Virus record (IMG/VR): IMGVR_UViG_3300028416_000004
Location: 124,001 to 188,000 of that record
Direction: 5' to 3' (one strand)
DNA: 64,000 bases
In this document: positions 2,523 through 62,929 of the stretch, piece after piece
Layout of the letters: each line of letters begins with the position of its first letter
Position numbering within the stretch: position 1 is the stretch's first letter
Notes under the pieces: generated by a model
Databases searched by the model: none
Seen by the model: only the letters and a program-made list of their open reading frames with translations
What the model was told of the DNA's origin: nothing
Made by a program: the position numbers and the translations under genes

Positions 2523-2635
2523 CTTAAACTTGTTTTTATTATTTTAATTACTTATAAATATTAAACAAAAAAAATTATTTGATTATATTTAATTTTTTTT
2601 TTAATTTATTTCTATAAAATTTAAAATTCACCAAT

Positions 2636-2662
2636 AAAAAAAGGGAACTAAATAGCTCCCTT
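2636..2662 (-). terminator. Intrinsic terminator after sheath gene
   Basis: Minus strand AAAGGGAGCTA-TT-TAGTTCCC followed by a T-run. Confidence 0.65.
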
Positions 2663-2700
2663 TATTTTTATAAATTTGTAAATTCTTAATATTTAAAAAG

Positions 2701-5034
2701 TTAAAAATCTTCGAATCTAGCTCCAGTAGGTAAAACTTGAAAAGTTAAATCTATAAACTCAGCAGTTCTTGTAGGTTTCAATTGAATTTTACCAACTAAA
2801 GTATTTCTATCTACAACCTCTGGTGGATTATTTGTTTCATCCATTATAACTCTAAATCCAGTTAAACCTCTTTGATTTTGAATTTGTAATAATAAAGGTT
2901 CTACTTTAGATAAGAATTGGTCTCTTAAAGTTTGGTCATTTTGCTCAAACAATAAAGTTTGAGATGTTGCAGCTACTACTCTTCTAATTTGTAACAATAA
3001 TCTTCTTACACTAATTCTATCAAGAGCAGACTGTCTAATTTGAAGTGTTTTTTGTCCATAAATTACCACTCCATTTTGAACAAATGTGGCGATTGGATTA
3101 ATTCTTCCTTCATATAATGAATCTCTATCAGTTTGACTCAATTTAATATCTGCTTTTCTTACAGAATCTCCAACAGTACCTCTATTTATACCAGCAGGTG
3201 CAAACCAAGGGAATGATACATTATCTGTTAAAGCGATTGATTTAACAACTTCAGCTGTAGGAGGTAAATATAAAAATTGTCCAGTTGATTGGTCTTCAAT
3301 TTGTACCCAAGGCCAATAAGTTGCTGCATAATTTGAATCAATACCTGTGTCTTGCATTGCTAAAACGGCTTCTTCTGGAGTACCTTTTGCTGTATCTGTA
3401 GTTAACCTAGGAGCATCAATTATATATAAAGTATCAGCTCTATCTTCTATCTTTCCTAAAGCATACTTAACTAATTCTTGGTTATTTCCGTAATCAATAC
3501 CTGGAGTAGCAAATAAGTTAACATCAACTTCTTCTGGGTTAGTGAAGATATCTATCGCTTCTTTAAAAGCCGTTCTATTAGAAGTGTCTGAAATATTTGT
3601 TGTAAATGTAGGAGTTCTAAATTTATTCCAACCATCAAAACCTCCAGCAGGAGCAAGTGTGAACTTTCTTTCTGCTTTAGTGTAACCACTTAAAGTTAAA
3701 CTTCCAGAAACAAACGTTGAAGGTGCTCCAGATTCTAAGTGAAAACCAGGTACTACAACTTTTCCAGCACTTCCAGTTCCTACATACTTAAACATATCTG
3801 CTTCAACAGTATTAATAACATTAGAAAAAGTAACTTTATCTGCAGTAAATTCAGTGTAAGCTAATTCTGAAATACCTAAGAAAGTTTTATTTACAGAATC
3901 TCCTGATAAATAAGATGTTTTATAATATAAAGGTGTTGCAGTAGTTCCAGTTTCTACCTCTACTTGACTATATCCTTCAAAACCTGCTGGAACAACATTT
4001 GAAGGATGTCCTTCTTGCATATCTAACGTTACAAATACAGATTGTCTAGGATATTCTTCATCAGTAGTACCAATTACTCTAGCAATATAATTTCTTTGAG
4101 TAGGGTCCATAGTAACACCTCTAAATCTCTCTAAAGCTGTTTGAAAAGCTGCTGAATCATTATCGTTAAAATCTCTAATTATTACATCAAAAGTTTTTGT
4201 GATTGTATCTATATTTGATATAGATATCTTAATTTCTCTATTCGCAGAATCTCCATCAGAAATAGATTGAAATTTAAATAATTTTCTAACTTGACCACCA
4301 ACTAAATTAGAAACAATATAAGGTGTCTCTGGATTAGTGTAAGGTCCAGCAAAATCTGTATAAGTTGAATCAGTTGAAAAAGTTATAGAATCTGAAATTC
4401 CTGTTATTGAACCTTCAGCTACTGCTTGTCTTAAAAAATGAGGATAAATAGATTCTACATAAATGCCATAATCTCCTGATAATTTTTTAGGATTTTTACC
4501 TATAACATTAACAATATAATCTTCTCTACTTTCATCTAAAGAAACTGTTAAAGTATTTGCAGAAAAAGGCCCTGTTGAAGCACTTAATACAAAACTTCCT
4601 AAAGGAGATGAAGATACTCCCTTTTCTAAGTCAGTTGCAATATTGTGTAAAAAAGTATTTCCTTCATCATCTGATTTACTTTTTATTACAGCAATAATAG
4701 CTCCATCATCTATTGTTCCTCCAGTAGGAGATGTTGCTGTGATAATCCATGCATTAGAATCGGTAAAACCTTCTTTTCCTAAAACTCTAGTTACAGTTAA
4801 TTCATTAGATTGTGTTAAAAAAGCGTTTGCTACATAAGGTAATTGTAAACTTGAATTTGTTCCTCCAAATCTAAACAAAAACTCATCAGTACTTCTAATA
4901 CTAATTGGTTCAAATGCTGGTCCTTTTTGTGTTAATCCAACAAGGCCTAACTTAGTTAAACCAACTCTTGATGCGAATACCGAAAAATCTTGCTCTTTTG
5001 TGTAAACGCCGGGCGATACGAATATAGTTGCCAT
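2701..5034 (-). CDS. Tail sheath protein (T4 gp18-like)
   Basis: N-terminal VSPGVYTKEQD and KGPAFEP; C-terminal YAATYWPW, WFAPAGINRG, GQKTLQ, LDRISVRRLL, KPTRTAEFI. Confidence 0.95.
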   Translation of the reverse strand: MATIFVSPGVYTKEQDFSVFASRVGLTKLGLVGLTQKGPAFEPISIRSTDEFLFRFGGTNSSLQLPYVANAFLTQSNELTVTRVLGKEGFTDSNAWIITATSPTGGTIDDGAIIAVIKSKSDDEGNTFLHNIATDLEKGVSSSPLGSFVLSASTGPFSANTLTVSLDESREDYIVNVIGKNPKKLSGDYGIYVESIYPHFLRQAVAEGSITGISDSITFSTDSTYTDFAGPYTNPETPYIVSNLVGGQVRKLFKFQSISDGDSANREIKISISNIDTITKTFDVIIRDFNDNDSAAFQTALERFRGVTMDPTQRNYIARVIGTTDEEYPRQSVFVTLDMQEGHPSNVVPAGFEGYSQVEVETGTTATPLYYKTSYLSGDSVNKTFLGISELAYTEFTADKVTFSNVINTVEADMFKYVGTGSAGKVVVPGFHLESGAPSTFVSGSLTLSGYTKAERKFTLAPAGGFDGWNKFRTPTFTTNISDTSNRTAFKEAIDIFTNPEEVDVNLFATPGIDYGNNQELVKYALGKIEDRADTLYIIDAPRLTTDTAKGTPEEAVLAMQDTGIDSNYAATYWPWVQIEDQSTGQFLYLPPTAEVVKSIALTDNVSFPWFAPAGINRGTVGDSVRKADIKLSQTDRDSLYEGRINPIATFVQNGVVIYGQKTLQIRQSALDRISVRRLLLQIRRVVAATSQTLLFEQNDQTLRDQFLSKVEPLLLQIQNQRGLTGFRVIMDETNNPPEVVDRNTLVGKIQLKPTRTAEFIDLTFQVLPTGARFEDF

Positions 5035-5100
5035 CTGATTATTATTTTTTAATTTTAAATTTATACAGTTTTACAATAAATAGGATAAAAAAATTCAAAA

Positions 5101-5817
5101 CTAACATTCGTCCTCACGAATTTGTATAGAAATTTTTGTAATTGTCTGAACTCTCTCGAATTTCTTTGGGTCTACGATTCTAGAATGTACCGTTAAAGGA
5201 TATACTAATTGAAAAAATCTATCTGAATCTATACTATCTACAGTGTTATCTTCACTAGGGTCTCCTAAAATAGCTGGTACATTATAACCATTAATTTTCA
5301 TATAACCTTGTCCGTCAGAAAAACCTTCTTCTAACATTTTTTCATATGAAATATTTACATCTTGCATATAATGAGTTAAAAATCTTAATTCATATTCTAC
5401 ATCCACCCAAGTAGGTTGTGGAATTTTAAAAATTTCATAACCCCCCAGCACTCCATCTGTACTAGGAACTTTAACATAATTAAATTTTAATTTTTTTGGT
5501 ACAGTTCTCCTTAATGGAGCTGTACCTTTTTTTACTGACTTTCTCCTCATAGTCATAAAAGGCATTCTTATCTCCTCTCCACTTTCATCTTTAAGATATT
5601 TCCAGTTCATTTTAAATTCAGCCCACCTTTCTTGTGTTAAAAATATAACTGGAACTCTTATGTCTTTACCTTCTGCATCTTCAACAGTAATATTTAAATC
5701 ATAAATGAAATCTCTCATACCCCTATCAACATCTTCTAATAAAAGTTTTTGAGGTAAATAATTATTATTTTTAAAACTATCATCAAGATTATCATTAATA
5801 TTTTTTTGTATAGACAT
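5101..5817 (-). CDS. Tail terminator/sheath stabiliser (T4 gp15-like)
   Basis: VPVIFLTQERW...IRMPFM..PQPTWVDVEYEL; position between neck and sheath genes. Confidence 0.65.
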   Translation of the reverse strand: MSIQKNINDNLDDSFKNNNYLPQKLLLEDVDRGMRDFIYDLNITVEDAEGKDIRVPVIFLTQERWAEFKMNWKYLKDESGEEIRMPFMTMRRKSVKKGTAPLRRTVPKKLKFNYVKVPSTDGVLGGYEIFKIPQPTWVDVEYELRFLTHYMQDVNISYEKMLEEGFSDGQGYMKINGYNVPAILGDPSEDNTVDSIDSDRFFQLVYPLTVHSRIVDPKKFERVQTITKISIQIREDEC

Positions 5818-5870
5818 TTATTTTTATTTTATCTTTTTTATAATAAATATTATATAATTTTAATTAAACA

Positions 5871-7373: not shown

Positions 7374-8603
7374 TTAACCTAAATAAATAGGAAGTGGACC
7401 ATAACCTAAAGTTTTGTTTACATACTCTTGCATTAATGCATTGTTTTCTAATAAAGATTTATAATTTAATCTATCTAATAAATCTCTTAACTCCTCTTTT
7501 AAAGTTTTCATATCTTCTTTACCATTAGATATTAAATCTGCATGATTCATTGTTAGAGAAGCATCTGGTATTGGTAATTCACCTGAAAATTTACCTCTAA
7601 CACCAATTCCTAACAATTCTTTCGCATTAGCTTGTGCATATTTTTTAACCCATGTTTTTGCTGGGTCATTTAATTCATTAAATCTTAAATTATATAAAAC
7701 AGCATCAGAAGGGCCAGAAACTAAACCATTACCTTGATTTTGTAAACCGTCTACTGAATTTGTACTACCTGTAAATCCTGGATTTGCAGTATTTCCACTA
7801 AAAGCATCATTACCACCAATTCCTATTTTATCATAATAATAATAAAACATAGTTCCTGGAGTACCAGCACCTCCACCAATACCCATATTGGAAGCACCAA
7901 GACCTGTAGTAGTGTTTATTCTAGGTATAGGATATAAAGAAATTACTTTAGTCCCATTTGCACCTCCTCTAACCCTGTATGAATATTCAGAACCTCTAAC
8001 TTTATTTCTTAATTCAGCAGCTTGAGCTGTTAAAATAGTGTCATATACTGGCATCACATGGTATAATGTGTGACCAGCAAAAGAAGCTCCAAATTCAGAA
8101 AAAGCTATATTTGAATTTGCAAAAGGGTCTAAACCAAATAAATTTATAAAGTTAGGAGTAAACCAAAGAACTTCATTTATTTCTTGACCTGCAGGAATTA
8201 TGTAATCTTGTGTACCAGCTGTTAGGGGAATATTTCCTAACTTCAACTCCCTATTACTGTTCATACCCCCAAGACCACTTACTTGTTCAGCATAAGCAGT
8301 TGAGAATGTTTTTTCAAAACCAAAATTTTGTGAAACAAATTTTAAAGTAAAATCTATATCACTAGGCAAACCTAACATTTGTGAAAGTCTATTTTCTAAA
8401 GCCCATTGATGTATATAAGAAGAATATTCTTCAATAGCTTCACATAAACATTCTTCTAATTGTTCATCTTCTAATTCAACACCCATAACAGGCTCACCCA
8501 ACTTTCTTCTAATTCTTCTATAAATTCTAGAAATTTGTTGGTCAGTCATTCCTTCTAAACAACCTTCAGAAATAATTTCACAATACCCAAAACCTTGACT
8601 CAT
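7374..8603 (-). CDS. Neck/head-tail adaptor (T4 gp13-like)
   Basis: RRKLGEPVMGVELEDEQL, WVKKYAQANAKELLG..RGKFSG, C-terminal PLPIYLG. Confidence 0.85.
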   Translation of the reverse strand: MSQGFGYCEIISEGCLEGMTDQQISRIYRRIRRKLGEPVMGVELEDEQLEECLCEAIEEYSSYIHQWALENRLSQMLGLPSDIDFTLKFVSQNFGFEKTFSTAYAEQVSGLGGMNSNRELKLGNIPLTAGTQDYIIPAGQEINEVLWFTPNFINLFGLDPFANSNIAFSEFGASFAGHTLYHVMPVYDTILTAQAAELRNKVRGSEYSYRVRGGANGTKVISLYPIPRINTTTGLGASNMGIGGGAGTPGTMFYYYYDKIGIGGNDAFSGNTANPGFTGSTNSVDGLQNQGNGLVSGPSDAVLYNLRFNELNDPAKTWVKKYAQANAKELLGIGVRGKFSGELPIPDASLTMNHADLISNGKEDMKTLKEELRDLLDRLNYKSLLENNALMQEYVNKTLGYGPLPIYLG

Positions 8604-8633
8604 ATTATCTTTTTTTTAATTCAATAAATAAAA

Positions 8634-8891
8634 TTAATAAATGTTACTTTTTGATTTAAAACCTATAAAAGTTCCACTATTAACATTAATTGATTTAACT
8701 ACAACATCTATAGAACTATTTGTTGTACCACTCCAAGTAAAAGTTCCACCACCTAAAGCTGTTATATCAATTGAACCATCTGAAAGACAATAAACTTGAT
8801 GAACACTAGAACCTGTAATACCATCTCCTAAATCATTTAAATCCATAGTACCCACTAAAGGAATAACTTTATAGTTCGCTTTTATATTCAT
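8634..8891 (-). CDS. Small putative virion protein
   Basis: 85 aa, beta-rich and G/S/T-rich; upstream late-type motif; co-oriented with neck genes. Confidence 0.5.
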   Translation of the reverse strand: MNIKANYKVIPLVGTMDLNDLGDGITGSSVHQVYCLSDGSIDITALGGGTFTWSGTTNSSIDVVVKSINVNSGTFIGFKSKSNIY

Positions 8892-8916
8892 AATTTTATT
8901 TTTTATATATAAATAG

Positions 8917-8947
8917 TTGGAAAAAACAATCTATTTGGTTATATTTG
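8917..8947 (+). promoter_or_regulatory. Bacteroidota-type host promoter (TTG-N20-TATATTTG)
   Basis: TTG 8917-8919, 20-nt spacer, perfect TAnnTTTG at 8940-8947. Confidence 0.6.
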
Positions 8948-8979: not shown

Positions 8980-9651
8980 ATGAATAAAGATTATATAATT
9001 AATGTTGATAATAAAAAAGATAAAGAAGCTTTAAAATCTTTTTTTAATTATATTGAAGAAAATTATGGTGAAGAATTTCCAATTCCTGATAATCATTTAG
9101 AAAATATTATTTCTAAAAAAATGTATAATGAATTGTTGTTTGAATATTATTTAGATACATATACGACTCTTTCTATTATGGAAGATAGAAATGTTGATGA
9201 ATTATTAGAGATTGAAAAAGAAGATTTATTAGGTTTTCATCATAATTTAACAAAAAAATTTAAAGTTAACTCAGATTTATATTTAACTAAACAGTATGAG
9301 AAACAATTAGAAGATTTTATTAATCTTTCTATTGATACAGATGATTATATTGTTAGTCCTATAAAAAAATTGAAAGAACTTGACTGGGAGGGGAGATATA
9401 TGAATCATTGTATTTCTACATATAGATATAAAATAACAGATGGTGATTATGTAGCCTTTAAATTTTATAACAAAAAATCTTGGGAAAGACTGACTTTAGG
9501 TTTTAATATAAAAAATAATGAATTAATTTTTAATCAACTAAAAGCTCATTCTAATTTTTCAGCTTCAAAAGAAAGTAGAGAGATGGTAATTGATTATTGC
9601 AATAAATTAAATTTAAAATTTGATAAAAATAATTACGATTTAAGAATTTAA
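8980..9651 (+). CDS. PcfJ-like domain protein
   Basis: ELDWEGRYMNHCISTY...RLTLG...QLKAHSN matches the PcfJ C-terminal signature. Confidence 0.7.
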   Translation: MNKDYIINVDNKKDKEALKSFFNYIEENYGEEFPIPDNHLENIISKKMYNELLFEYYLDTYTTLSIMEDRNVDELLEIEKEDLLGFHHNLTKKFKVNSDLYLTKQYEKQLEDFINLSIDTDDYIVSPIKKLKELDWEGRYMNHCISTYRYKITDGDYVAFKFYNKKSWERLTLGFNIKNNELIFNQLKAHSNFSASKESREMVIDYCNKLNLKFDKNNYDLRI

Positions 9652-9672
9652 TTTATATTTATATAATCTAAA

Positions 9673-11959: not shown

Positions 11960-11987
11960 TGTAATATTTTTGTAAAAAAAACGTTAT
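11960..11987 (+). promoter_or_regulatory. ECF-sigma-type promoter (TGTAAT-N16-CGTTAT)
   Basis: Same motif with the same 16-nt spacer recurs at 12472-12499. Confidence 0.55.
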
Positions 11988-12011: not shown

Positions 12012-12476
12012 ATGAATTGTCAAGAAGAAAGATTTTATATTGCAACAATTTTTGGTTCTGAACCTACTGAAATTATTTTTGATTTAGAAAATTTAATTGA
12101 AAACTTTTTTGATTCTAATGAAATAAATTATGTTCGTGCTGGAAGTACTATTTATTTTGTTTTTTCTGAAGGAATTGAAAAAATAGATGAAATATTTCAT
12201 GACTTACCTCTTCATTCTGCTTATACAATTATTGATATAACTGATAATTTGAATGTTTTTGATTTTAGGGGTTACATAACAAACGAACATTCAGAATCAA
12301 AAAAATTTATGTCAATTATGAATAAATTTTTAGAATCAAATGAAATTGGTTTAAAAGAAGAGGAAGAAGTTGAGTTGACAAATGAAGAAAAATTAGAAAT
12401 GGCTATTTCGACAGAAAATTATGAATTAGCAGCTCAAATAAGAGATGAAATGAATAAAGTTGAATCTTCATTGTAA
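12012..12476 (+). CDS. Protein with C-terminal UvrB/UvrC (UVR) coiled-coil motif
   Basis: C-terminal KLEMAISTENYELAAQIRDEM. Confidence 0.7.
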   Translation: MNCQEERFYIATIFGSEPTEIIFDLENLIENFFDSNEINYVRAGSTIYFVFSEGIEKIDEIFHDLPLHSAYTIIDITDNLNVFDFRGYITNEHSESKKFMSIMNKFLESNEIGLKEEEEVELTNEEKLEMAISTENYELAAQIRDEMNKVESSL

Positions 12477-12499
12477 TATTTTAAAAAAAAATACGTTAT
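12472..12499 (+). promoter_or_regulatory. ECF-sigma-type promoter (TGTAAT-N16-CGTTAT)
   Basis: TGTAATATTTT...ACGTTAT, second copy of the 11960 motif. Confidence 0.55.
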
Positions 12500-14587: not shown

Positions 14588-14627
14588 AATATCTTTTGTT
14601 ATATAAATATTATAAAAATAAAATAAG

Positions 14628-14984
14628 TTATTTAGTTTTCCATAACATTTGTATTGCTAAGATACAAACACAAAGAAATATACATACACCTGTTTTTAAA
14701 TTTATTGGTTCATTGTTGAAATGTGATGTTAAAAATGCAAAAGATATTATACCCAAACAGAAACCTATAATACGTGATGGCCACATAGTACCACCAGTAC
14801 CTAATACAATATACTCAACACCTTTAATAAACATAAAGGAGATTGGGATAGCTATAATATATGGAAACCATGAACTCTTATTCTTAAACCATTCTACTTT
14901 AACAGGCGCATAGATTTGAAACCAAACTAATAGTTGTGCAACAAATAAAAATGCTGACCCAATACCTATCTTAATGTAATCCAT
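14628..14984 (-). CDS. Small four-TM membrane protein (SMR/DMT-like)
   Basis: Four hydrophobic segments; F.NEPIN.K..V motif resembling DMT-superfamily loops. Confidence 0.55.
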   Translation of the reverse strand: MDYIKIGIGSAFLFVAQLLVWFQIYAPVKVEWFKNKSSWFPYIIAIPISFMFIKGVEYIVLGTGGTMWPSRIIGFCLGIISFAFLTSHFNNEPINLKTGVCIFLCVCILAIQMLWKTK

Positions 14985-15027
14985 AACATCTTTTTTATAA
15001 ATATATTATAAATATTAAAGAATAAAA

Positions 15028-16503: not shown

Positions 16504-16561
16504 ATTTGTAAATATAACTTAAAAAAGTCATAAAACCTAAATTAGGCATAAAATTTATAAC

Positions 16562-16592
16562 AAAAAAAAGAGGCTAACATTGTTAGCCTCTT
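16562..16592 (-). terminator. Intrinsic terminator of major capsid gene
   Basis: AAGAGGCTAACA-A-TGTTAGCCTC plus T8 on the minus strand. Confidence 0.85.
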
Positions 16593-18192: not shown

Positions 18193-18221
18193 TTTTTTTC
18201 TTTTTTTTTTAATTAAGTTTG

Positions 18222-19658: not shown

Positions 19659-19730
19659 TTTATTTTTTTTTACTTAAATGAAAGGTTTACGGATAAATAG
19701 TTTATAAAAAATTAAATTCCATTTAAAATG

Positions 19731-20375: not shown

Positions 20376-20452
20376 TTTTTTTTATTTATTATATAATAAT
20401 TAACATATATAAATATGATGAAAAAAAGTTTATTAATTTTTAATTAAAAAAC

Positions 20453-22736: not shown

Positions 22737-22770
22737 TTTATATATTTTTTAAATAAATATGAAAGAAATT

Positions 22771-24351: not shown

Positions 24352-24409
24352 AGTTAATTATATTTTTAGTTCAAAATAGTAATTAATTATTAAAAGTAAA
24401 TGATAAATA

Positions 24410-24916
24410 TTATTGATTTTTATTTGAAATTTTTAAAGAATTAAAAATGTTATCTATGATTTCATTTTTAAATAACTCCAAATCTTTAGAAGAATGTTTA
24501 GAATTTAAATTAAACCTACTTATAATTCCTTTAAAGTTTATTGAAGCAACTGTATTTGAGTCATTTGAAAATTGTACAGTTAAAACTAAATCAAAGTTTT
24601 CATCTATTGGTTTTTCTTCAAAAATACCATTTATATTAATGTTTATAAATAAAGAATTTGAATTTATTTTTGTTGAGCTTTTTAAAAGTTTTAGATTTAG
24701 TGATTTATCTTTTTCAATTTCATCATCAATACTAGTTAATATGTCAGAACCTAAATTTAACAGGTAGTCTTCTGAGAACCAACCTAAAGTATCCTTATCG
24801 CTTCTACCTGTATCAGACTTAAGTTCAATATTATCTTCTTTTAATATTCCAGATAAAAATTTGATTCTATTTTTGTAAGATTCACTAATCATTTTATTGA
24901 ATATATTTTTTGACAA
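24410..24916 (-). CDS. Putative internal head protein
   Basis: N-terminal ISESYKNRIKFLSGILKE resembles the scaffold C-terminal RMKLLAGI motif. Confidence 0.5.
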   Translation of the reverse strand: MSKNIFNKMISESYKNRIKFLSGILKEDNIELKSDTGRSDKDTLGWFSEDYLLNLGSDILTSIDDEIEKDKSLNLKLLKSSTKINSNSLFINININGIFEEKPIDENFDLVLTVQFSNDSNTVASINFKGIISRFNLNSKHSSKDLELFKNEIIDNIFNSLKISNKNQ

Positions 24917-25772: not shown

Positions 25773-25881
25773 AATACTTTTATAAAACATTTAATAATAA
25801 ATATTAAATAAAATTAAGTTATTAGTTACAAAGAATAAAATAATACTTATATTTATAATATAATAAACTAATATAAATTAT

Positions 25882-26598: not shown

Positions 26599-26629
26599 TT
26601 TTTTATATTTATAAATAAAAACAGAAATT

Positions 26630-27899: not shown

Positions 27900-28031
27900 T
27901 TTAAATTATATTTAATAATTTTATAATTTTTAAAAATAAATAGCTGAAAAAAAAGTTTTTTACACTTTTCATTTATTTTTAATAAAAAAAATGTATATTG
28001 CTTAATATAAGAAATAATACAATTCATAAAT

Positions 28032-41717: not shown

Positions 41718-42602
41718 ATGCCAGGGCAAAATTTAAAATCTTTAAGTGAATTAAAGTTTGAATCAATAGGAGAAGAATTTTTGTATTTACATAAAAATAT
41801 TACAAAATACAATCCAGAATTTGAACAAGAAAATGACGATAAAAAAGAATTAACAATTGAATTCCTTAGAGAAGAATATTCTAGAATTGTCAATGAAGAA
41901 GAAGTCGAAGAAAAGTATGAAAAAAACTCTGTATATTGGAGTGTAGAACAAGAAAGAGCTATAGCTAATTTTATAAAAGAGAAAGATAATATCAAAAAAG
42001 AAAAAATTTTTAGAGAAGATATTTATAAATCTTTAAAAAAATTAGTTGAAAACATTATATTTACCTATAAACTTTTTCGTTCTGATATAGAAATAAGAGA
42101 GTTACAAGAGGATTGTATGTCTTTTTTAATAACAAAAATGGATAGGTATGACCCCTCAAAAGGTGCGAGAGCCTTTGCTTTTTTCGGTACTATTGCTAAG
42201 CATTATTTAATGGGTGAAAAGAAAATCTCTTATAAAAATACACAAAGTAACATAAGTATAGAAAATTCATCAGCTGAAGTAAATTTAGGAGAAGATAGTG
42301 AAGAAAAGAAAATGGATTTAGAGTCTGAAAAGATTAATAATGTAGTTTTTAGAGAGACAATAAAAAAATTAGAAGAAGAATTAATAAATCCTAAAATTTT
42401 ACCAAATGACAAAAAGGTAATGGAGGCTATAATTTTTATATTTAATAGACATGAAGTAATTAATATTTACAATAAAAATTTATTGTATCATTTAATTAAG
42501 GAAAGAACAGATTTACAAACAAAAGAAATAACTTATTCTTTAACTAGAATAAGAAATATGTATAAAAACTTTAAAGAAGATTTTTTAAGAGGATTAAATT
42601 AG
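41718..42602 (+). CDS. Late-transcription sigma factor (T4 gp55-like)
   Basis: YW...QERAI, KLVENII, ELQEDCMSFL..KMDRYDPSKG.RAFAFFGTIAKHYL (sigma region 2). Confidence 0.75.
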   Translation: MPGQNLKSLSELKFESIGEEFLYLHKNITKYNPEFEQENDDKKELTIEFLREEYSRIVNEEEVEEKYEKNSVYWSVEQERAIANFIKEKDNIKKEKIFREDIYKSLKKLVENIIFTYKLFRSDIEIRELQEDCMSFLITKMDRYDPSKGARAFAFFGTIAKHYLMGEKKISYKNTQSNISIENSSAEVNLGEDSEEKKMDLESEKINNVVFRETIKKLEEELINPKILPNDKKVMEAIIFIFNRHEVINIYNKNLLYHLIKERTDLQTKEITYSLTRIRNMYKNFKEDFLRGLN

Positions 42603-42643
42603 TTATTTTTTTTGTTAAATATATTTATTAATAAATTAAAAGT

Positions 42644-45603: not shown

Positions 45604-45629
45604 TTTATTTAAATTTAATATTTATAAAT

Positions 45630-49117: not shown

Positions 49118-49504
49118 TTAAAATTCTCTTGGTATATTTAGTGTTACAGAATCTGTAACTCCAAAGAAAGTGTTTATTTTAAATACTATTTCTATTGTTA
49201 ATAAATTAGTTTCTTCTTGTTCTGTGAAAAAAATTTTTACTATTGTTATTTGAGGAATAAATTCAGCAACCTTTTCTTCAATATCTTTTTGTAGTTCAGA
49301 TTTTGTAAAATCATCCAATGGCTCCATAATATAGTCGTATATTGGTGAAAAAAGAGTACTTCTCATAGGTCTTTGCCCTCTTCTTGTTGTCAATAAAGAA
49401 ATTAAATCAGCCTTTAAAGCTTGTTCAGTTGTTTGGTTAGTATCAAATATACCACCTGTTGTTGTTTCTTTAAAAGGAAATTTAATATTTATACTATTAG
49501 CCAT
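49118..49504 (-). CDS. Baseplate wedge protein (T4 gp25-like)
   Basis: INIKFPF, LKADLISLLTTRRGQRPM, YIMEP, FIPQI. Confidence 0.9.
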   Translation of the reverse strand: MANSINIKFPFKETTTGGIFDTNQTTEQALKADLISLLTTRRGQRPMRSTLFSPIYDYIMEPLDDFTKSELQKDIEEKVAEFIPQITIVKIFFTEQEETNLLTIEIVFKINTFFGVTDSVTLNIPREF

Positions 49505-49628
49505 TATGTTTTTTTATTATAAATAGTAAAGTCAAAAAAATTAAAGACTTTTTTAATGCACTATTTATGTTATATATAATAAATACTAATTAATATATAT
49601 AATTTAAAATAAAAATAAACTATAAAAT

Positions 49629-56396: not shown

Positions 56397-56414
56397 TGAG
56401 ATATATTTATATAT

Positions 56415-56735
56415 ATGAAAGAGACTTATCAATATAAAATAAGATTAAATGTCACTCCTTTTGGGGGAATAAAAACTAGTACTGGTTTAATTTCAGATGC
56501 TTATGATAAAGACTTTTATATAAATATCCCAGTATACAAGACACATAATTTAGAGGGATATGTAAATGTTGACATTGACCCGTCAAGAGCTACTATGGAA
56601 AGACAATTTATAAATCCTTTTTTTATAGAATTAGGTTTTTTTGAAAATGTAGAATCAGTATTGAGTTCAAATACAAGTTCCGACAATTCCATACAAATTA
56701 AAGCTCAAAATTACGGAATAGATATTAATAAATAA
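56415..56735 (+). CDS. Hypothetical (likely virion) protein
   Basis: 106 aa; late-type motif just before the ATG. Confidence 0.55.
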   Translation: MKETYQYKIRLNVTPFGGIKTSTGLISDAYDKDFYINIPVYKTHNLEGYVNVDIDPSRATMERQFINPFFIELGFFENVESVLSSNTSSDNSIQIKAQNYGIDINK

Positions 56736-56737: not shown

Positions 56738-57568
56738 ATGTTAAAGTATAAAATAGTAATAAAACCAGTAAATCTATCAGATGCTACAATAGAAAATAAC
56801 TTTAGCGTTACAAATGGTTATTTAGTTTATGATAATTCTAAAGTTGAACAAGGAGTTTTGGTTGATGAGTTTAATGTTCAACAATTTTTAGAAGACCCCA
56901 ACAATTCTGTTGTTGTCGAAAAATTCAAAAAATACCTTAGAGAATATACTAATGAATTAGAATTTAATGAAATATTTTATAAACCAAAAAAAGTAGCTCC
57001 AATACTTAATGATTTTTATAATGAAGAAATTAGATTTAACTCTGAAGCAAATCCAGCATTAATAACTGATGCAATAAAAGATACAGAGGTTATATATTAT
57101 CAAAATAATAATTACGACTTTTTAAGTAATCAAAGAATGTCTTTTGAAAATAAATCTTTATTATTTGAGTCTTTAAGTGCTAATACAGAATATAAAGATT
57201 ACTATATTGATTTTAAAGTTGATTTAAATAAAAGCCTTATAGGCAATAATGATTATTCAAATTATATCAAAGATTATAAGGAAGATGATATTGTCTATAA
57301 AAATTCTTTTGTAAATTTAAATGATAAAGTTAATCCATTTGAGTTTTGGACAAATGAAAAAAATACAAAAAAATGGATTACAAGTCCAGAAAATACTGAA
57401 GAAATAAGAGTTCAAGATTTTGAAAATATAGCTTTAAAATTCGAACAACAAGCAGAAGCTGTAAAAGACAAGAATAGCATCGAATTTGCAACTCTAAATA
57501 ACAAAGCAATACAAGCTAGAAAAGTTGCTGATTTAGAAAGAGCTAAATTGAATAGAAAAACAAATTAA
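56738..57568 (+). CDS. Hypothetical (likely virion) protein
   Basis: 276 aa in the structural operon; MLKYKI start resembles YQYKI of the previous gene. Confidence 0.55.
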   Translation: MLKYKIVIKPVNLSDATIENNFSVTNGYLVYDNSKVEQGVLVDEFNVQQFLEDPNNSVVVEKFKKYLREYTNELEFNEIFYKPKKVAPILNDFYNEEIRFNSEANPALITDAIKDTEVIYYQNNNYDFLSNQRMSFENKSLLFESLSANTEYKDYYIDFKVDLNKSLIGNNDYSNYIKDYKEDDIVYKNSFVNLNDKVNPFEFWTNEKNTKKWITSPENTEEIRVQDFENIALKFEQQAEAVKDKNSIEFATLNNKAIQARKVADLERAKLNRKTN

Positions 57569-57628
57569 CAATTTAATAAAACTTTAAAAATATTTTTAAT
57601 TTATTATATTTATATTAAACGATAATTT

Positions 57629-58507
57629 ATGAGTGTAGGTATATACGGTACGAAAAAGTTGGCAGACATAACATCAGATGATGTAGATGTTTTATATGCA
57701 TATAGTCCTAGTAGAGAAGATTTAGGAGAAGTTACTTTTAAACCTTTATATAATGCTATTAATGAAAGTGATTTACTTAAAATGATTGGAGTTGATGGTA
57801 TGTATAAGTTAAGATTGCCTGCCGATATTTTTAATAAAATAGGTTTTTACTCCTTAATGATAAAACCTAAAACTTTTCAAGTTACAATAAGAGATTGTTC
57901 ATATGTAGTTACAGAAGATGAGACTGGTGTGCAATTATCCAAAAAAGGTGTAGTTATACCTGCGGCACAATTTAGAAAAACTAATGGACTAGTTGGTTGG
58001 TCTGTTGAATATATAGGTGCTGATGGGAGAAAGATAAAAAATTTAAATAGAATAATAACAAGTAGCGATTTAGTAAGTCCTTCTGTAAATACAACAACTG
58101 TTAATAGGGGTGCTACAACTTATAATTTAGATAGCACTGGAAGTAATTTATTTTTAACCTTAACGCCTGATGAAGGAAGTATAGTTTCTGGGGGTGGTGC
58201 AGCTAATTTAGGAGATGCTGGACAGGTTATTTTATTGTCTAACACTTATTTTGACCCTATTTCAATAGAAGTTGAAATGGTAGAACATGATGTTCAAACT
58301 TTATCTTATGCTCTTTATGGTAATACCACTAGAGATAATGAAACTGGTACATTAACATATTATGATGAAAATAATAATATTTATAGACAATATAATTTAT
58401 TTACACAGAAAAAACAGTTCTCTCAAGGTAGTATAGATATTCGTCAAATAAGAGACAATATAAATTTCAATCAAGATTTTCAAACAATAACTCAAGGTTT
58501 AAAATAA
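57629..58507 (+). CDS. Putative virion structural protein
   Basis: G.YGT, GMYKLRLPA..FN.IG.Y, NTYFDPI.IEVEMVEHD, YRQYNL; late-type motif upstream. Confidence 0.55.
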   Translation: MSVGIYGTKKLADITSDDVDVLYAYSPSREDLGEVTFKPLYNAINESDLLKMIGVDGMYKLRLPADIFNKIGFYSLMIKPKTFQVTIRDCSYVVTEDETGVQLSKKGVVIPAAQFRKTNGLVGWSVEYIGADGRKIKNLNRIITSSDLVSPSVNTTTVNRGATTYNLDSTGSNLFLTLTPDEGSIVSGGGAANLGDAGQVILLSNTYFDPISIEVEMVEHDVQTLSYALYGNTTRDNETGTLTYYDENNNIYRQYNLFTQKKQFSQGSIDIRQIRDNINFNQDFQTITQGLK

Positions 58508-58551
58508 AATATTTTTTTTCTTTTTAAGAATATATTTTAATATTTATATAT

Positions 58552-59187
58552 ATGAAAAAGAAAGTTAAAAAGTTAGAATTAAAAAAATTGATTCAAGAGT
58601 ATAATTATTTGTTGACAGATGAAACTTATAAACAAGAAGTTGTTTCTGAAACTAAATCTGATTTCCTTAAAGAAGTTCATAATAAAAGAGTTGATTTAGG
58701 TTTAATAAAAGATGAACCGTACACTCCAGAAAATGATAACAATAACAATAAAAAGGAAGAAGGAAGTAAAGGTGAAGAAGGGAATGAAGCAGAAGATAAT
58801 AAACAAAACTCTAATAGTGAAGACGAAATAACAAATGATTCAAACAAAAAAGAAAAATCACCTAAAGTTAAAAAAATATACAGAGAAATTGTAAAAAAAA
58901 CCCACCCAGACAAAGACAAAACAGAAAAGTATATAGATTTATATAAAGAAGCAACTTCTGCATATGAAAAAAACGATATAGTAGCCCTAATATTTATTTG
59001 TTCTAAATTAGATATTGAAATTGATTTAGAAGAAGATGATATAGGAAGTATAACTTTAGCAATTAAAGAAAAGAAAAAAGAACTACAAAATATAGAAATG
59101 TCTTATTTGTGGTTATGGTATAATTCTAAAACACAAGAACAAAGAGATAAAGTGGTAGAATTGTTTATAAGTAAAAATGTCAAATAA
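58552..59187 (+). CDS. J-domain (DnaJ-type) co-chaperone
   Basis: VKKIYREIVKKTHPDK...LYKEATSAYE with an intact HPD. Confidence 0.75.
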   Translation: MKKKVKKLELKKLIQEYNYLLTDETYKQEVVSETKSDFLKEVHNKRVDLGLIKDEPYTPENDNNNNKKEEGSKGEEGNEAEDNKQNSNSEDEITNDSNKKEKSPKVKKIYREIVKKTHPDKDKTEKYIDLYKEATSAYEKNDIVALIFICSKLDIEIDLEEDDIGSITLAIKEKKKELQNIEMSYLWLWYNSKTQEQRDKVVELFISKNVK

Positions 59188-59244
59188 AAAATTGCATCAT
59201 ACTTTATTATAAATAAATCATAATATTTATAATAAAAAATTATT

Positions 59245-59982
59245 ATGGCTTTATTAAATTTTATTATGGTGGTATTACCACCTGTTGTTTATAGTGGAAT
59301 AATCTATTTAACATCACCATACAAATCTATCAGCTTGACTAAATCATTACAATATCTAATTGGAGGTATTTTATCTATACCTTTAGTGATGTTATTTAAT
59401 TTACTATTACCTTATAAATCAGACTTATTAACCAGTCCATTTGTTTTCTGCTTTTTCGAAGTTGCACCACATGAAGAAATATCTAAATTATTAGTTTATT
59501 TTATTATATATAAAATAATGGATAAACAAAAATCAAAACACCCAATAGGTACAATGTTTTATATGGGAATGGTTGGTCTAGGCTTTGCTATGATTGAAAA
59601 TGTACAATACTTATGTAGGTTTGGCGAAAAAATATTATTTATAAGAAACTTTACATCAACATTTGCTCATATGATATTCGGTATGTTTACAGGTTATTGG
59701 ATATCTTTAAGTAAAATTAAAATAAATAAATATAGCACTAGGTCTGTATTTGATATTGTTATGTCTAGTAAACAAAAAATTAGGTTTTTTGTGTATGTGA
59801 TGATTGGTTTAATGTGTGGTATTGGTTATCATGGGTTATGGAATTATAATTTAACTGTTTCAGGCAAATCAGCACCATCAATAATGATTTTAATGTTGTT
59901 TATAGGTTTAATTAGTTCAAAGTTTGCTTCAAACAATCTTAGAAACAAAAAAAATATAAATCAAGAAAATGAATATAATTAA
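59245..59982 (+). CDS. PrsW-family intramembrane metalloprotease
   Basis: APHEEISK, GLGFAMIEN, FAHMIF, HGLWN motifs; multiple TM helices. Confidence 0.88.
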   Translation: MALLNFIMVVLPPVVYSGIIYLTSPYKSISLTKSLQYLIGGILSIPLVMLFNLLLPYKSDLLTSPFVFCFFEVAPHEEISKLLVYFIIYKIMDKQKSKHPIGTMFYMGMVGLGFAMIENVQYLCRFGEKILFIRNFTSTFAHMIFGMFTGYWISLSKIKINKYSTRSVFDIVMSSKQKIRFFVYVMIGLMCGIGYHGLWNYNLTVSGKSAPSIMILMLFIGLISSKFASNNLRNKKNINQENEYN

Positions 59983-60575: not shown

Positions 60576-61421
60576 ATGAAAGATTTAATAAAACTTTATG
60601 AAAACTTTTGTTTTTTAAAGGAAATCCCTTTTAAATTAGATGATAGTGTTAATAGTTATGATGACACAACTCTTTTTTGTCCAGCTGGTATGCAACAATT
60701 TAAAGACAAATTTAAAAATCCTGATAACACCACAATAGCAAATATACAATCTTGTATTAGGTTAAATGATTTAGAAGAAATCGGTGATGGTACCCATATG
60801 TTACACTTTAGAATGATTGGTTTGTTTTCTTTCGGTAAAATGACACTTAATGAGGCTGTTGATTTTTGGGTGGATTTTATTAAAGACTTCTTAGGTATAA
60901 AGATTGATTATGTTACTATTCACCCAGATAAATTTGATACTTGGAAATGGTTATATGAACGTCATAAAATACCAATTAAATTAGATAGTGAATGTATTTG
61001 GTCAGATGGTGAAATGGGTGGTTATTGCACCGAGTTTTATCATGATGATGTTGAAATTGGTAATATCGTAAATACAATGGATAAGTTTATTGATGTTGGT
61101 TTTGGATTCTCTAGAATTAATGATATTATTAATGGTAAGAACGAATTAACAAAAAATGATATATTGAGTGATGCTATCAATAAGATTATTGAAGCTGGTT
61201 TTAAACCTGGTCCACAAAAACAAGGATACGTGCTTAGGAGACTTTTAAGGCAACTTTATAAGGGTGGTGGTAGTATTGAACATCCATTCTTCACAAAAGA
61301 GGTTGAGAGACAAGAAAAGGCTAAAGTAAGATATGAAAGGCTTAAAATTAAACATCGTGACAAACCAAAAGAATGGTGGTTTGATACACATGGAATTGAT
61401 TTAGATGAAATGGAGGATTAA
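60576..61421 (+). CDS. Miniature alanyl-tRNA synthetase-like protein (catalytic core only)
   Basis: TTLFCPAGMQQFK, QSCIRLNDLEEIGDGTH..F.M.G.FSF, EIGNIV, IDVGFGFSRI, GYVLRRLLR, FDTHG; only 281 aa. Confidence 0.85.
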   Translation: MKDLIKLYENFCFLKEIPFKLDDSVNSYDDTTLFCPAGMQQFKDKFKNPDNTTIANIQSCIRLNDLEEIGDGTHMLHFRMIGLFSFGKMTLNEAVDFWVDFIKDFLGIKIDYVTIHPDKFDTWKWLYERHKIPIKLDSECIWSDGEMGGYCTEFYHDDVEIGNIVNTMDKFIDVGFGFSRINDIINGKNELTKNDILSDAINKIIEAGFKPGPQKQGYVLRRLLRQLYKGGGSIEHPFFTKEVERQEKAKVRYERLKIKHRDKPKEWWFDTHGIDLDEMED

Positions 61422-61439
61422 AAACCCTCCATTTTTTTT
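61408..61439 (+). terminator. Intrinsic terminator
   Basis: AAATGGAGG...CCTCCA followed by T8. Confidence 0.7.
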
Positions 61440-61440
61440 A

Positions 61441-62661
61441 TTATAACAAATTAAAATAGTTGTTTGTAGTAGGGTCGTATTTTAATTCAGAACTATTTCC
61501 ACCATTAAATAAATTATGGATTAATTTATCGTATGTTTTTGATATTAATGGGTTTGATACATGATATCTCCATAAAGATTGTTTATTACGTTCCTTATAG
61601 TATTCCAGATTTTTATCGTGGTTTTCCAATATCCAGTTTAACATTTCACCACCTTTTCTTGAATCTGAGTTTTCATAATAATAACCTATATCTTTACACA
61701 TTGGTGCGTTATGTAATACAGGATAACCCATATACGCAACATCCAAATAAAGATAGTTTAATGGGTTCATAATTTGATGAGAAACAACAATATCCAAAAA
61801 CTGAGATACAACATAAGAAGTTTGATATCTATGTTCCATTGTTACTTTTTTGTCCTTATATAAGTCCAAACTTTTAATAATTGATATGAATGGTGGATTT
61901 TTATCCAAACCACCTTTTTCGTGTTTTCCGTTTGTTATCATCAACTTATCAATCTTATTTTTACCAATTTCTGTACGATAAGATTCTTCTGCAATTAAAG
62001 TTGGTATAACAGCGGTTTTAACCATATTTAAGTTTGGTTCCATAATACCAATAACCTTCTTTTCTTTTGTTGGGTCGTATCTATGGTCTTTTTTATATTT
62101 TCCTTCTTTGCTTAATTTATTGATTGAGTTTAGGGATGAATCCAAGAAACTATTATCCCATAAGAAAGGTACACTTATTGCGTTTGTTCTATAAAGTGTT
62201 TTAAAGTAACCACTATTATTATAATCTTGTTGTGGCACATACCAAACTTCATCAACACCTTCATCAACAATATGTGGCTTTCCTTCTTTAAATAACATCT
62301 CTTCAATGAATAAAACATAATTGTTACCACACTTATAATTAATAACTTTATTGGTTGGTTTTTGTTTCTTAAAATCTTTAATTGTTTCGTTTGATATTTG
62401 TGCTCCCATGGATATAATTAAATCCATTTCTCTGTATTTATCTTTTAATAACGAAACATTAATTCCATCGAAGTGTTTTGGTGGGTTATTTAAATCAATA
62501 TCCAACGTATTCAATAAATAAATTTGATAATTCTTTTTTGATTTTTTTAATAGGTTAATCATCATAAGGATGTTTAGTTTCATCCCATTTGTCCACATTG
62601 ATTCTTTTATATCGTTTAATGCTATGGTAATACCTATTTTTATATTTTCTGTATCCATCAT
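61441..62661 (-). CDS. DUF2827-family (glycosyltransferase-like) protein
   Basis: IGIT...SMWTNG, YKCGN.Y, VW..PQ, VPFLW, IMEPN...VK, DIVVSHQ..NPLNYLY.D....GYPVLHNA. Confidence 0.75.
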   Translation of the reverse strand: MMDTENIKIGITIALNDIKESMWTNGMKLNILMMINLLKKSKKNYQIYLLNTLDIDLNNPPKHFDGINVSLLKDKYREMDLIISMGAQISNETIKDFKKQKPTNKVINYKCGNNYVLFIEEMLFKEGKPHIVDEGVDEVWYVPQQDYNNSGYFKTLYRTNAISVPFLWDNSFLDSSLNSINKLSKEGKYKKDHRYDPTKEKKVIGIMEPNLNMVKTAVIPTLIAEESYRTEIGKNKIDKLMITNGKHEKGGLDKNPPFISIIKSLDLYKDKKVTMEHRYQTSYVVSQFLDIVVSHQIMNPLNYLYLDVAYMGYPVLHNAPMCKDIGYYYENSDSRKGGEMLNWILENHDKNLEYYKERNKQSLWRYHVSNPLISKTYDKLIHNLFNGGNSSELKYDPTTNNYFNLL

Positions 62662-62894
62662 ACTATTCTTGGTTTTTTTGTGTTTTTATAGATATCAGAG
62701 TTAAATTTCTTCAAGTCATCTAATGAAATATTTAGTTTTTTTCTCCACTTTGTTATAACGTGTTCGTAACCATTATTATATAACTCACATTCTTCTAAAA
62801 CTGGGTTATCAACACCTACTTCATCTATATCATAAGATGGGTCCGAAATTAAATATAAATCTCTTGTTATCTTATAATAAATATCTTTTTCCAT
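62658..62894 (-). CDS. Hypothetical protein
   Basis: 78 aa; 4-nt overlap with the DUF2827 gene. Confidence 0.55.
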   Translation of the reverse strand: MEKDIYYKITRDLYLISDPSYDIDEVGVDNPVLEECELYNNGYEHVITKWRKKLNISLDDLKKFNSDIYKNTKKPRIV

Positions 62895-62929
62895 AACTTT
62901 TAAACCTTTAAAAATAAATATAAGGGAAT

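What the first reader, a model, noticed from the sequence alone, without database searches (positions are those of the whole stretch)
2553..62921. Late promoter motif [AC]TATTTAT[AT] is the reverse complement of the T4 late promoter TATAAATA
Seen in sense orientation just upstream of about 20 units. Minus strand: 2553-2561 (tube), 5075-5083 (sheath), 5842-5850, 8908-8916, 14602-14610, 14996-15004, 19692-19700 (scaffold), 20408-20416 (protease), 22752-22760, 25796-25804, 27935-27943, 49518-49526, 62913-62921. Plus strand: 9655-9663 (tRNAs), 25849-25857, 26605-26613, 42621-42629, 49561-49569, 57606-57614, 59223-59231. It is absent before the GT operon and the A1 gene. Established: T4 gp55 reads a lone -10 element, TATAAATA. 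Inference: the gp55-like sigma at 41718..42602 reads TATTTATA. Caveat: the intergenic DNA is extremely AT-rich.
Basis: partly seen in the sequence, partly recalled or inferred. Interest (0 to 1): 0.6.

Follow-up and report, generated by a model that had tools for sequence, protein, structure and literature searches.

The report
Late-gene promoter of marine Flavobacteria phages
A short DNA word, TATTTAT, sits in the reading direction just before the virion and lysis genes of this uncultured sea-water phage and of hundreds of its relatives; it is most likely a promoter that needs no -35 box and is read by a very divergent phage sigma factor, a new variant of the phage T4 late-gene switch.

Summary
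All 20 listed sites carry TATTTAT in the sense orientation, and 18 fit the stated 9-mer. In same-direction intergenic DNA of the rebuilt 241-kb genome the 9-mer occurs 49 times sense and 6 antisense. It never occurs between convergent genes. TATTTAT is the most enriched upstream 7-mer against AT-matched Markov models.

It is conserved. In 79 related contigs the count is 313 sense to 6 antisense. It stands before 58 of 64 prohead-protease orthologues but only 4 of 77 capsid genes. It is also present in the cultured Flavobacterium phage immuto.

It marks portal, terminase, sheath, tube, baseplate and lysozyme genes. Replication genes carry the Bacteroidetes host box TAnnTTTG instead. There is no -35 element. 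A conserved purine 5-7 nt downstream fits a start site.

The window's sigma has a region-2 fold closest to T4 gp55. It shows no sequence similarity to gp55 and has an extra sigma-4-like domain. It co-occurs with the motif.

Caveats:
- Two more sigma genes lie outside the window.
- No transcript 5' ends could be mapped.
- The "reverse complement of T4" relation has no mechanistic meaning.

Verdict: a new variant of a known kind, of moderate interest.

The parts
1964..1972 (-). L site directly before ORF 1576-1962, just after a hairpin plus T-run
2553..2561 (-). L site 30 nt before tail tube gene 2034-2522
5075..5083 (-). L site 40 nt before tail sheath gene 2701-5034
5842..5850 (-). L site 24 nt before ORF 5101-5817; motif kept in 7 of 7 orthologues
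8908..8916 (-). L site 16 nt before ORF 8634-8891; kept in 6 of 7 orthologues
9655..9663 (+). L site 9 nt before the tRNA-Glu/Asp/Gln cluster (untranslated genes, so not a translation signal)
14602..14610 (-). L site 14 nt before ORF 13304-14587
14996..15015 (-). two tandem L sites (14996-15004, 15007-15015) before ORF 14628-14984
19692..19700 (-). L site (last base C) 33 nt before probable scaffold gene 18222-19658; kept in 17 of 17 orthologues
20408..20416 (-). L site 32 nt before prohead protease 19731-20375; kept in 58 of 64 orthologues
22752..22760 (-). L site 15 nt before ORF 21924-22736; kept in 11 of 11 orthologues
24402..24410 (-). L site (last base C) 50 nt before ORF 24007-24351
25796..25804 (-). 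L site 5 nt before ORF 24894-25790, in a divergent region
25849..25857 (+). L site 24 nt before PhoH gene 25882-26598; immuto and Mel-JY01 also carry the motif in their structural regions
26605..26613 (+). L site 16 nt before ORF 26630-26845
27935..27943 (-). L site 35 nt before ORF 27504-27899, inside the doubtful small ORF 27896-28054
41718..42602 (+). divergent sigma-70-family gene (294 aa): N-terminal extension, sigma-2 domain (res 72-172), disordered linker, sigma-4-like domain (res 202-294). No L site upstream of it.
42621..42629 (+). L site 14 nt before ORF 42644-43003, right after the sigma gene
45618..45626 (+). L site 3 nt before ATG of 45630-46046 (candidate leaderless mRNA)
49518..49526 (-). 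L site 13 nt before baseplate gp25-like gene 49118-49504
49561..49569 (+). L site (last base G) 59 nt before ORF 49629-51035
56403..56411 (+). L site 3 nt before ATG of 56415-56735 (candidate leaderless mRNA)
57606..57614 (+). L site 14 nt before ORF 57629-58507
58540..58548 (+). L site 3 nt before ATG of 58552-59187 (candidate leaderless mRNA)
59223..59231 (+). L site 13 nt before PrsW-protease gene 59245-59982
62913..62921 (-). L site 18 nt before ORF 62658-62894, downstream of a hairpin plus T-run
8623..8631 (-). weak variant (T at position -1) before 7374-8603; not kept in 8 orthologues, probably not functional

Best explanation
The word V-TATTTAT-W (V = not T) is the single recognition element of a phage-specific promoter class with no -35 box. 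This class drives the virion, assembly, lysis and tRNA genes of a roughly 241-kb T4-related sea-water phage whose host is very probably a flavobacterium.

Inferred geometry: the element lies at about -12 to -5, the place of the host sigma-A '-7 box' TAnnTTTG. It differs from that box at -7 (A for T) and -5 (A/T for G), and transcription starts at a conserved purine 5-7 nt downstream.

Inferred reader: host RNA polymerase core carrying the phage's divergent sigma (window 41718-42602). Early genes use host-type TAnnTTTG promoters.

What is shown: the existence of the motif, its strand bias, its position, the lack of a -35 partner, its conservation, its gene-class association and the sigma fold.

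What is inferred: promoter function (about 0.85), late timing (about 0.7), and that this particular sigma reads it (about 0.55-0.6).
For: - Strand and place: 49 sense to 6 antisense in same-direction spacers, 0 in convergent spacers, 22 in divergent spacers. The motif is enriched over Markov orders 1-3 and over shuffles.
- No -35: 384 non-redundant sites from 80 genomes show at most 0.14 bit at any upstream position. A or a purine stands at +11 to +13 from the first T.
- Conservation: 313 sense to 6 antisense in 79 relatives with capsid identity of 43-82%. The motif is kept before protease (58 of 64), scaffold (17 of 17) and three other genes, but absent before the capsid gene (4 of 77) and the gene at 7374 (0 of 8). 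It is present in cultured Flavobacterium phage immuto and in Mel-JY01.
- Gene class: 10 of 12 recognised virion or lysis genes with their own spacer carry it, against 1 of 9 replication genes, which carry TAnnTTTG instead; Fisher p 0.0019.
- Transcriptional, not translational: it precedes a tRNA cluster.
- Sigma: the best structural match of residues 72-172 is T4 gp55 (7d7d_F, Z 11.2, rmsd 2.4 A, 96 residues), followed by many sigma-2 domains. The family has at least 298 members, all viral and unannotated.
- Pairing: immuto has this sigma (E 5e-41) and the motif but no RpoD-like sigma. The other phage-specific motif (M) is not conserved in relatives.
- Host box position of -12 to -5: PMC9723704.
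Against: - No 5' ends or timing data exist.
- The genome encodes two further complete RpoD-like sigma factors that could read the motif in this phage.
- The window's sigma has a sigma-4-like domain, which usually reads a -35 box, yet no such box exists.
- One 87%-complete relative with the motif showed no copy of the sigma.
- The motif also precedes many small ORFs of unknown function, PhoH and a PrsW protease, so 'late' may really be 'middle plus late'.
- Six sites lie only 4 nt before the called ATG, which fits only if those mRNAs are leaderless or the start codons are miscalled.
- The relatives are phylogenetically related, so the pooled counts are not independent events.
Confidence: 0.6

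Rival explanations
1. The motif is a promoter, but it is read by another factor: one of the phage's two RpoD-like sigma factors, or host sigma-A redirected by a phage protein (as T4 AsiA/MotA do at middle promoters). The window's sigma would then serve another promoter class, for example the two-part M motif.
For: - Two complete sigma genes carrying regions 1.2, 2, 3 and 4 lie at G001 57223-58089 and 58184-59047.
- The window's sigma has a sigma-4-like domain, which suits a two-part promoter such as GTAAT-N16-CGT. That motif has 11 intergenic sense sites.
- The L word shares T-12, A-11, T-8 and T-6 with the host box.
Against: - Phage immuto keeps the L motif and the window-type sigma but has no RpoD-like sigma at E <= 1.
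- The M motif is absent from five relatives, three of which have RpoD-like sigmas and four the window-type sigma.
- So only the window-type sigma tracks the conserved L motif.
Confidence: 0.22
2. The motif acts on RNA, not on DNA. It would be an AU-rich processing site for an endoribonuclease, or a translation-initiation enhancer in a host that lacks Shine-Dalgarno sequences.
For: It is sense-specific and lies in short leaders 3-40 nt before start codons. Bacteroidetes mRNAs lack Shine-Dalgarno sequences (PMC6847099, listed).
Against: - The distance to the start codon varies from 3 to 60 nt.
- It precedes a tRNA cluster.
- It often follows a hairpin plus T-run that would already have ended the upstream transcript (9 of 77 sites, against 1 of 77 in the downstream control).
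- It is the only recurrent word in many divergent spacers, which must hold promoters.
- It has a -10-like make-up, a conserved purine at a fixed distance downstream and a co-conserved sigma.
Confidence: 0.08
3. The motif is a by-product of extreme AT richness, or it belongs to terminators or gene 3' ends.
For: Intergenic DNA is about 82% A+T. An order-4 Markov model, which largely contains the word itself, raises the expected count to 23.
Against: - The reverse complement has the same composition but is 8-fold rarer in sense here and 50-fold rarer in relatives.
- There are no copies in convergent spacers, where about 7.6 would be expected (p 5e-4).
- Presence and absence are conserved gene by gene in relatives of 30-36% GC.
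Confidence: 0.02

Closest known systems
Phage T4 late promoters (TATAAATA) read by gp55 with gp33 and the gp45 sliding clamp
   Same: - A single AT-rich -10-type element of 8-9 bp without a -35 box.
- It lies before virion genes, often right after a terminator.
- The phage is T4-related in its capsid, portal, protease, sheath, tube and baseplate genes.
- The phage sigma's region-2 domain has gp55 as its best structural match (PMC7892883, PMC2988020).
   Different: - The word is TATTTAT(A/T), not TATAAATA, and the T4 word is not enriched in sense.
- The sigma shows no sequence similarity to gp55. It is 294 aa against 185 aa, and it has an N-terminal extension and a sigma-4-like C-terminal domain.
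- No gp45-type or DnaN-type clamp gene was found in the 88%-complete record.
- The replicase is of the Pol III alpha type, not gp43.
Bacteroidetes sigma-A promoters (-33 TTG, -7 box TAnnTTTG at -12 to -5)
   Same: - If the conserved purine is +1, the element occupies the same position relative to the start.
- It shares T-12, A-11, T-8 and T-6 with the host box.
- The phage's own early genes use the true host box: TATATTTG is 13 sense to 0 antisense.
   Different: A instead of T at -7, A/T instead of G at -5, and no -33 element.
Two-domain phage sigma factors (ECF-like; e.g. Bacillus phage sigma-E-like proteins in BFVD)
   Same: The overall sigma-2 plus sigma-4 build of the window's protein.
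   Different: Those factors normally read two-part promoters with a -35 box and a CGT-type -10 box. The L motif has no upstream partner.

Membership tests
T4-type late promoter | Consensus TATAAATA on the non-template strand around -10 | tested here: not met
   TATAAATA in sense is 15 against 30 for its complement, and 19 against 213 in 79 relatives. The conserved word is TATTTAT(A/T).
T4-type late promoter | No -35 element; a lone -10-type box suffices | tested here: met
   384 non-redundant sites show at most 0.14 bit at any position from -50 to -2 relative to the box.
T4-type late promoter | Precedes late (virion, assembly, lysis) genes | tested here: met
   10 of 12 virion or lysis genes against 1 of 9 replication genes, Fisher p 0.0019. 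Timing itself was not measured.
T4-type late promoter | Depends on gp55, gp33 and a DNA-loaded sliding clamp | not testable with these tools
   No gp45 C-domain or DnaN domain-3 match in the 232-kb record. gp33 was not searched. Dependence needs experiments.
T4 gp55 sigma family | Detectable sequence homology to gp55 | tested here: not met
   hhalign of the family profile against T4 gp55 gives probability 0.1. There is no PHROG hit and no PDB sequence hit.
T4 gp55 sigma family | Sigma region-2 homology fold | tested here: met
   7d7d_F (gp55) is the top match of 48,161 chains: Z 11.2, rmsd 2.4 A, 96 residues. Other sigma-2 domains follow at Z 8-10, so the lead is small.
T4 gp55 sigma family | No sigma-4 domain; a C-terminal clamp-binding tail on a flexible linker | tested here: not met
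   Residues 202-294 fold as a sigma-4-like helical domain (3mzy Z 6.9; full-length sigma-B, sigma-S and sigma-32 align over residues 75-288). The conserved C-terminal F-K-x-D-F-L resembles the gp55 tail S-L-D-F-L, but it lies inside a predicted helix. This is a lead only.
Sigma-70 family | Region 2 recognised by curated profiles | tested here: inconclusive
   PF04542 scores E 9e-4 and 19.4 bits, below the cut-off of 24. TIGR02937 scores E 0.0015, below its cut-off. One family member carries PF04542. The fold evidence is clear.
Bacteroidetes sigma-A promoter | TAnnTTTG at -12 to -5 plus TTG near -33 | tested here: not met
   The L sites have A at the sixth and A/T at the eighth position, and no upstream TTG signal. 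True host-type boxes occur before other genes.

The most novel reading that the evidence does not exclude
This clade runs a three-tier transcription programme that is not organised like T4's:
- Host sigma-A reads TAnnTTTG early promoters. One of these drives a phage RpoD-like sigma.
- A fast-evolving two-part class (GTAATATTTT-N11-CGT) drives a second RpoD-like sigma and a few other genes.
- A clade-wide divergent sigma, which fuses a gp55-like region 2 to its own sigma-4-like domain and so replaces gp33 and the clamp, reads a lone TATTTAT box. That box would be derived from the host -7 box by two base changes, and would sometimes produce leaderless mRNAs.
Probability: 0.3. Interest if true: 0.65.

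Novelty: new variant of a known kind. Interest (0 to 1): 0.5.

Why it matters
Nothing appears to be published on how T4-related phages of Bacteroidota, a large and abundant uncultured group in sea and fresh water, time their gene expression. No paper in the searched library links this word to a phage promoter.

- A clade-wide promoter word and its probable sigma give a direct way to annotate transcription units and to separate early from late genes in hundreds of metagenomic phage genomes.
- The pair could supply an orthogonal promoter/sigma part for flavobacterial genetics.
- It shows how a T4-like late switch was rebuilt around the unusual promoter geometry of Bacteroidetes.
- It can be tested at once in the cultured relative, Flavobacterium phage vB_FspM_immuto.

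Tried and rejected
- **Reads:** The only RNA evidence is that 24 sea-water metatranscriptome runs hold 36-67% of the sampled words of 14500-20500.
- **Close relatives among deposited phages:** none at the DNA level.
- **Sequence routes to gp55:** the PDB profile search, PHROGs and hhalign against T4 gp55 were all blank. hhalign against the annotated RM378 sigma was also blank.
- **T4-type accessory genes:** no DNA_pol_B, no gp45 C-domain and no DnaN domain 3.
- **T4 word TATAAATA as a second promoter class:** rejected, because it is not enriched in sense.
- **A -35 partner for the motif:** none found.
- **M motif as a conserved class:** absent from five relatives.
- **Rhodothermus phage RM378:** no TATTTAT before its genes. 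A TTATTTAA-like word recurs instead. This was not followed up.
- **PHROGs and Pfam:** they left most large proteins unnamed.


Full report
**What the window is.** The 64-kb window is part of a 138,334-bp IMG/VR viral contig of 27% GC. CheckV estimates the contig at 49% complete. It encodes a T4-type major capsid protein (PF07068, E 3e-75), prohead protease, portal, large terminase, sheath, tube, and gp25- and gp6-like baseplate proteins. A 232,514-bp record that is 99.96% identical overlaps it and adds 102.8 kb on one side. I joined the two into a 241,158-bp working genome.

The added arm holds a Pol III alpha-type polymerase and a RecD2-like helicase, both with inteins. It also holds a second polymerase-like gene, a DnaB-like helicase, ribonucleotide reductase, a topoisomerase, a tape-measure-like protein and a baseplate hub. 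The nearest deposited phages are only distantly related, at 34-35% capsid identity: Flavobacterium phage vB_FspM_immuto, Microcystis phage Mel-JY01, uncultured huge phages and Rhodothermus phage RM378. IMG/VR holds more than 599 related capsid loci.

- The window has 49 matches against 25.6 expected from dinucleotide shuffles.
- Among all 7-mers, TATTTAT is the most enriched in sense-upstream DNA: 62 observed against 15 expected.
- The cleanest test uses spacers between genes of the same direction, where sense and antisense are unambiguous and composition is identical. The 9-mer is 32 to 4 in the contig and 49 to 6 in the 241-kb genome (p 2e-9).
- Markov models of orders 1-3 trained on the same spacers predict 5-10 copies of TATTTAT, against 38 seen.
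- Convergent spacers, which hold only gene ends, have no copy where about 7.6 would be expected. Divergent spacers, which hold only gene starts, have 22.

This rules out composition and a terminator or 3'-end role.

**Anatomy.**
- Aligned sites show no conserved position upstream. The base just before the box is A, C or G and almost never T (2 of 90 in an unconstrained set). The base after it is A or T.
- In 384 non-redundant sites from 80 genomes, no position from -50 to -2 exceeds 0.14 bit. There is therefore no -35 partner.
- Five to seven bases after the box there is a conserved A or purine: 81 of 90, and 281 and 277 of 384. I read this as the start site.
- That reading places the box at about -12 to -5. 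This is exactly where the sigma-A '-7 box' TAnnTTTG lies in flavobacteria (PMC9723704). The two words share T-12, A-11, T-8 and T-6, and differ at -7 and -5.
- The distance to the start codon peaks at 11-17 nt and ranges from 3 to 60 nt.
- Six sites in the contig lie exactly 4 nt before the called ATG. Three of them are in the window, at 45618, 56403 and 58540. These may give leaderless mRNAs. That is an inference only.
- One site lies 9 nt before the tRNA-Glu/Asp/Gln cluster. This argues for a transcriptional signal rather than a translational one.
- Nine of 77 sites follow a hairpin plus T-run within 60 nt, against 1 of 77 in a downstream control. This is the terminator-then-promoter layout familiar from T4 late genes.

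**Conservation.**
- In 79 related capsid loci (capsid identity 43-82%, GC 26-38%, one outlier at 53% GC), TATTTAT is the top or near-top strand-biased 7-mer in most. Pooled, the box is 313 sense to 6 antisense.
- Presence and absence are gene-specific and conserved. The motif lies within 80 nt upstream of 58 of 64 protease orthologues (11-23 nt from the start), 17 of 17 scaffold genes, 11 of 11, 7 of 7 and 6 of 7 orthologues of three other genes.
- By contrast it lies upstream of only 4 of 77 capsid genes, which sit behind the scaffold gene and are evidently co-transcribed, and of 0 of 8 orthologues of the gene at 7374.
- The cultured phage immuto (35% GC) shows the same word before its terminase, portal, sheath, PhoH and other genes: 17 sense to 5 antisense. 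Mel-JY01 shows eight sense sites. RM378 shows none; a TTATTTAA-like word recurs there instead.

**Which genes carry it.** In the 241-kb genome the box precedes portal, terminase, tube, sheath, scaffold, protease, gp25, baseplate hub, the tape-measure-like gene and a lysozyme. That is 10 of 12 recognised virion or lysis genes that have their own spacer.

The topoisomerase, a DNA polymerase, the primase, the ribonucleotide-reductase operon, a PcfJ-like gene and a ClpB-like gene instead carry TAnnTTTG, mostly as TATATTTG, which is 13 sense to 0 antisense. The box occurs before 1 of 9 such genes. Fisher's exact p is 0.0019.

The host-type box, the lack of Shine-Dalgarno sequences and the Flavobacterium host of the cultured relative together point to a Bacteroidota host. 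The box also precedes PhoH, a PrsW protease and many small unknown ORFs, so the class may be 'middle plus late'.

**The sigma.**
- ORF 41718-42602 (294 aa) gives only sub-threshold sigma-70 profile hits and no PHROG hit.
- It belongs to a family of at least 298 unannotated proteins, and the nearest ESM-Atlas clusters are all viral.
- An AlphaFold model built from 28 sequences (mean pLDDT 72) has a helical N-terminal part, a domain at residues 72-172, a disordered linker and a C-terminal helical domain.
- An exhaustive structural comparison puts T4 gp55 (7d7d_F) first: Z 11.2, rmsd 2.4 A over 96 residues. Sigma region-2 domains of many sigma factors follow at Z 8-10. The C-terminal domain aligns with sigma-4.
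- Profile comparison with T4 gp55 finds no sequence similarity.
- So it is a sigma-70-family protein with a gp55-like region 2, but it is not a gp55 family member and it is built differently.
- Its conserved C-terminal F-K-x-D-F-L recalls the clamp-binding tail of gp55. It lies in a predicted helix, however, and no clamp gene was found. I treat it as a lead only.

The first lies behind a host-type box. The second lies behind a further phage-specific two-part motif, GTAATATTTT-N11-CGT. That motif has 11 intergenic sense sites, two of them in the window at 11961-11984 and 12473-12496.

Comparative evidence favours the window's sigma:
- Phage immuto has the box and a homologue of the window's sigma (E 5e-41) but no RpoD-like sigma at all.
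- Two complete relatives have the window-type sigma.
- The two-part motif is absent from five relatives.

The only conserved sigma therefore goes with the only conserved phage-specific motif. The link remains a correlation, and I put it at about 0.55-0.6.

**Limits.**
- No transcript ends could be examined. I worked beside them and sent none of their letters to any search tool afterwards.
- Gene calls are my own greedy ORF choice, so some start codons may be wrong.
- Pooled counts over relatives are not independent.
- Literature searches found no earlier description of this word as a phage promoter, but the library is incomplete.

**Verdict.** This is a real, conserved, sense-specific promoter-like element without a -35 box, placed before virion and lysis genes. 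It works like the T4 late promoter but uses a different word, is placed like the Bacteroidetes -7 box, and is paired with a new divergent sigma family. It is a new variant of a known kind. The 'reverse complement of T4' relation in the title is a coincidence of two AT-rich near-palindromic words.

Noticed in passing
window 8940-8947 (+) and 38139-38146 (+); many more in the 241-kb genome: The host-type Bacteroidetes -7 box TATATTTG (TAnnTTTG) lies in sense before ORFs 8980-9651 and 38168-38668. Outside the window it lies before the topoisomerase, DNA polymerase, primase and ribonucleotide-reductase operon. It is 13 sense to 0 antisense. These are probably the early promoters, and they are a strong pointer to a Bacteroidota host.
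   Followed up: partly
window 11961-11984 (+) and 12473-12496 (+); nine more sites in the 241-kb genome: A third upstream motif, GTAATATTTT-N11-CGT, has a strict 16-nt spacer and an ECF-like two-part layout. It has 11 intergenic sense sites 25-54 nt before start codons, one of them before a phage RpoD-like sigma gene. It is absent from five relatives, so it evolves fast.
   Followed up: partly
outside the window: longer record G001 57223-58089 (-) and 58184-59047 (-) (locus L124): Two adjacent complete RpoD-like sigma genes (regions 1.2, 2, 3 and 4) bring the phage's total to three sigma factors. The first lies behind a host-type box and the second behind the GTAAT-N16-CGT motif, which suggests a cascade.
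   Followed up: partly
window 41669-41692 (+): A perfect 7-bp inverted repeat (CATTTAC, 10 nt, GTAAATG) lies about 25 nt before the sigma gene. It follows a terminator hairpin and is conserved in form in the closest relatives (L087-L092). It may be an operator or a leader hairpin controlling sigma expression.
   Followed up: partly
window 45618, 56403, 58540; also 98215, 130533 and 133390 of the oriented contig: Six genes have TATTTAT exactly 4 nt before the called ATG. With a start site 5-6 nt after the box, these would be leaderless mRNAs.
   Followed up: no
window 27994-28001 (+): The glycosyltransferase operon starting at 28032 has no L box. It does have TATATTGC, which fits the TAnnTTGY variant box reported before LPS-synthesis genes in Flavobacterium psychrophilum (PMC9723704).
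   Followed up: no
window 28032-41590 (+), also 22771-24003 (-): A 13.5-kb same-strand block of about 17 genes includes GT1 and GT2 glycosyltransferases. This is an unusually large sugar or polysaccharide modification module for a phage.
   Followed up: no
outside the window: G001 92545-95880 and 98060-102563: Inteins with homing-endonuclease domains interrupt the RecD2-like helicase and the Pol III alpha-type polymerase. The phage has no family-B (gp43-type) polymerase despite its T4-type virion genes.
   Followed up: partly
locus L128 (Rhodothermus phage RM378): RM378 lacks TATTTAT before its genes, but a TTATTTAA-like word recurs just upstream of several of them. It has an annotated 199-aa sigma next to the capsid gene. 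This may be a sister variant of the same system.
   Followed up: no
window 60576-61421 (+), 59245-59982 (+), 61441-62661 (-): Auxiliary genes here are an AlaX-like tRNA-synthetase editing-domain protein, a PrsW-family membrane protease (behind an L box) and a DUF2827 protein.
   Followed up: no
They lie in the divergent spacer between the protease gene and ORF 20523-21098 and were left out of all later searches.
   Followed up: no
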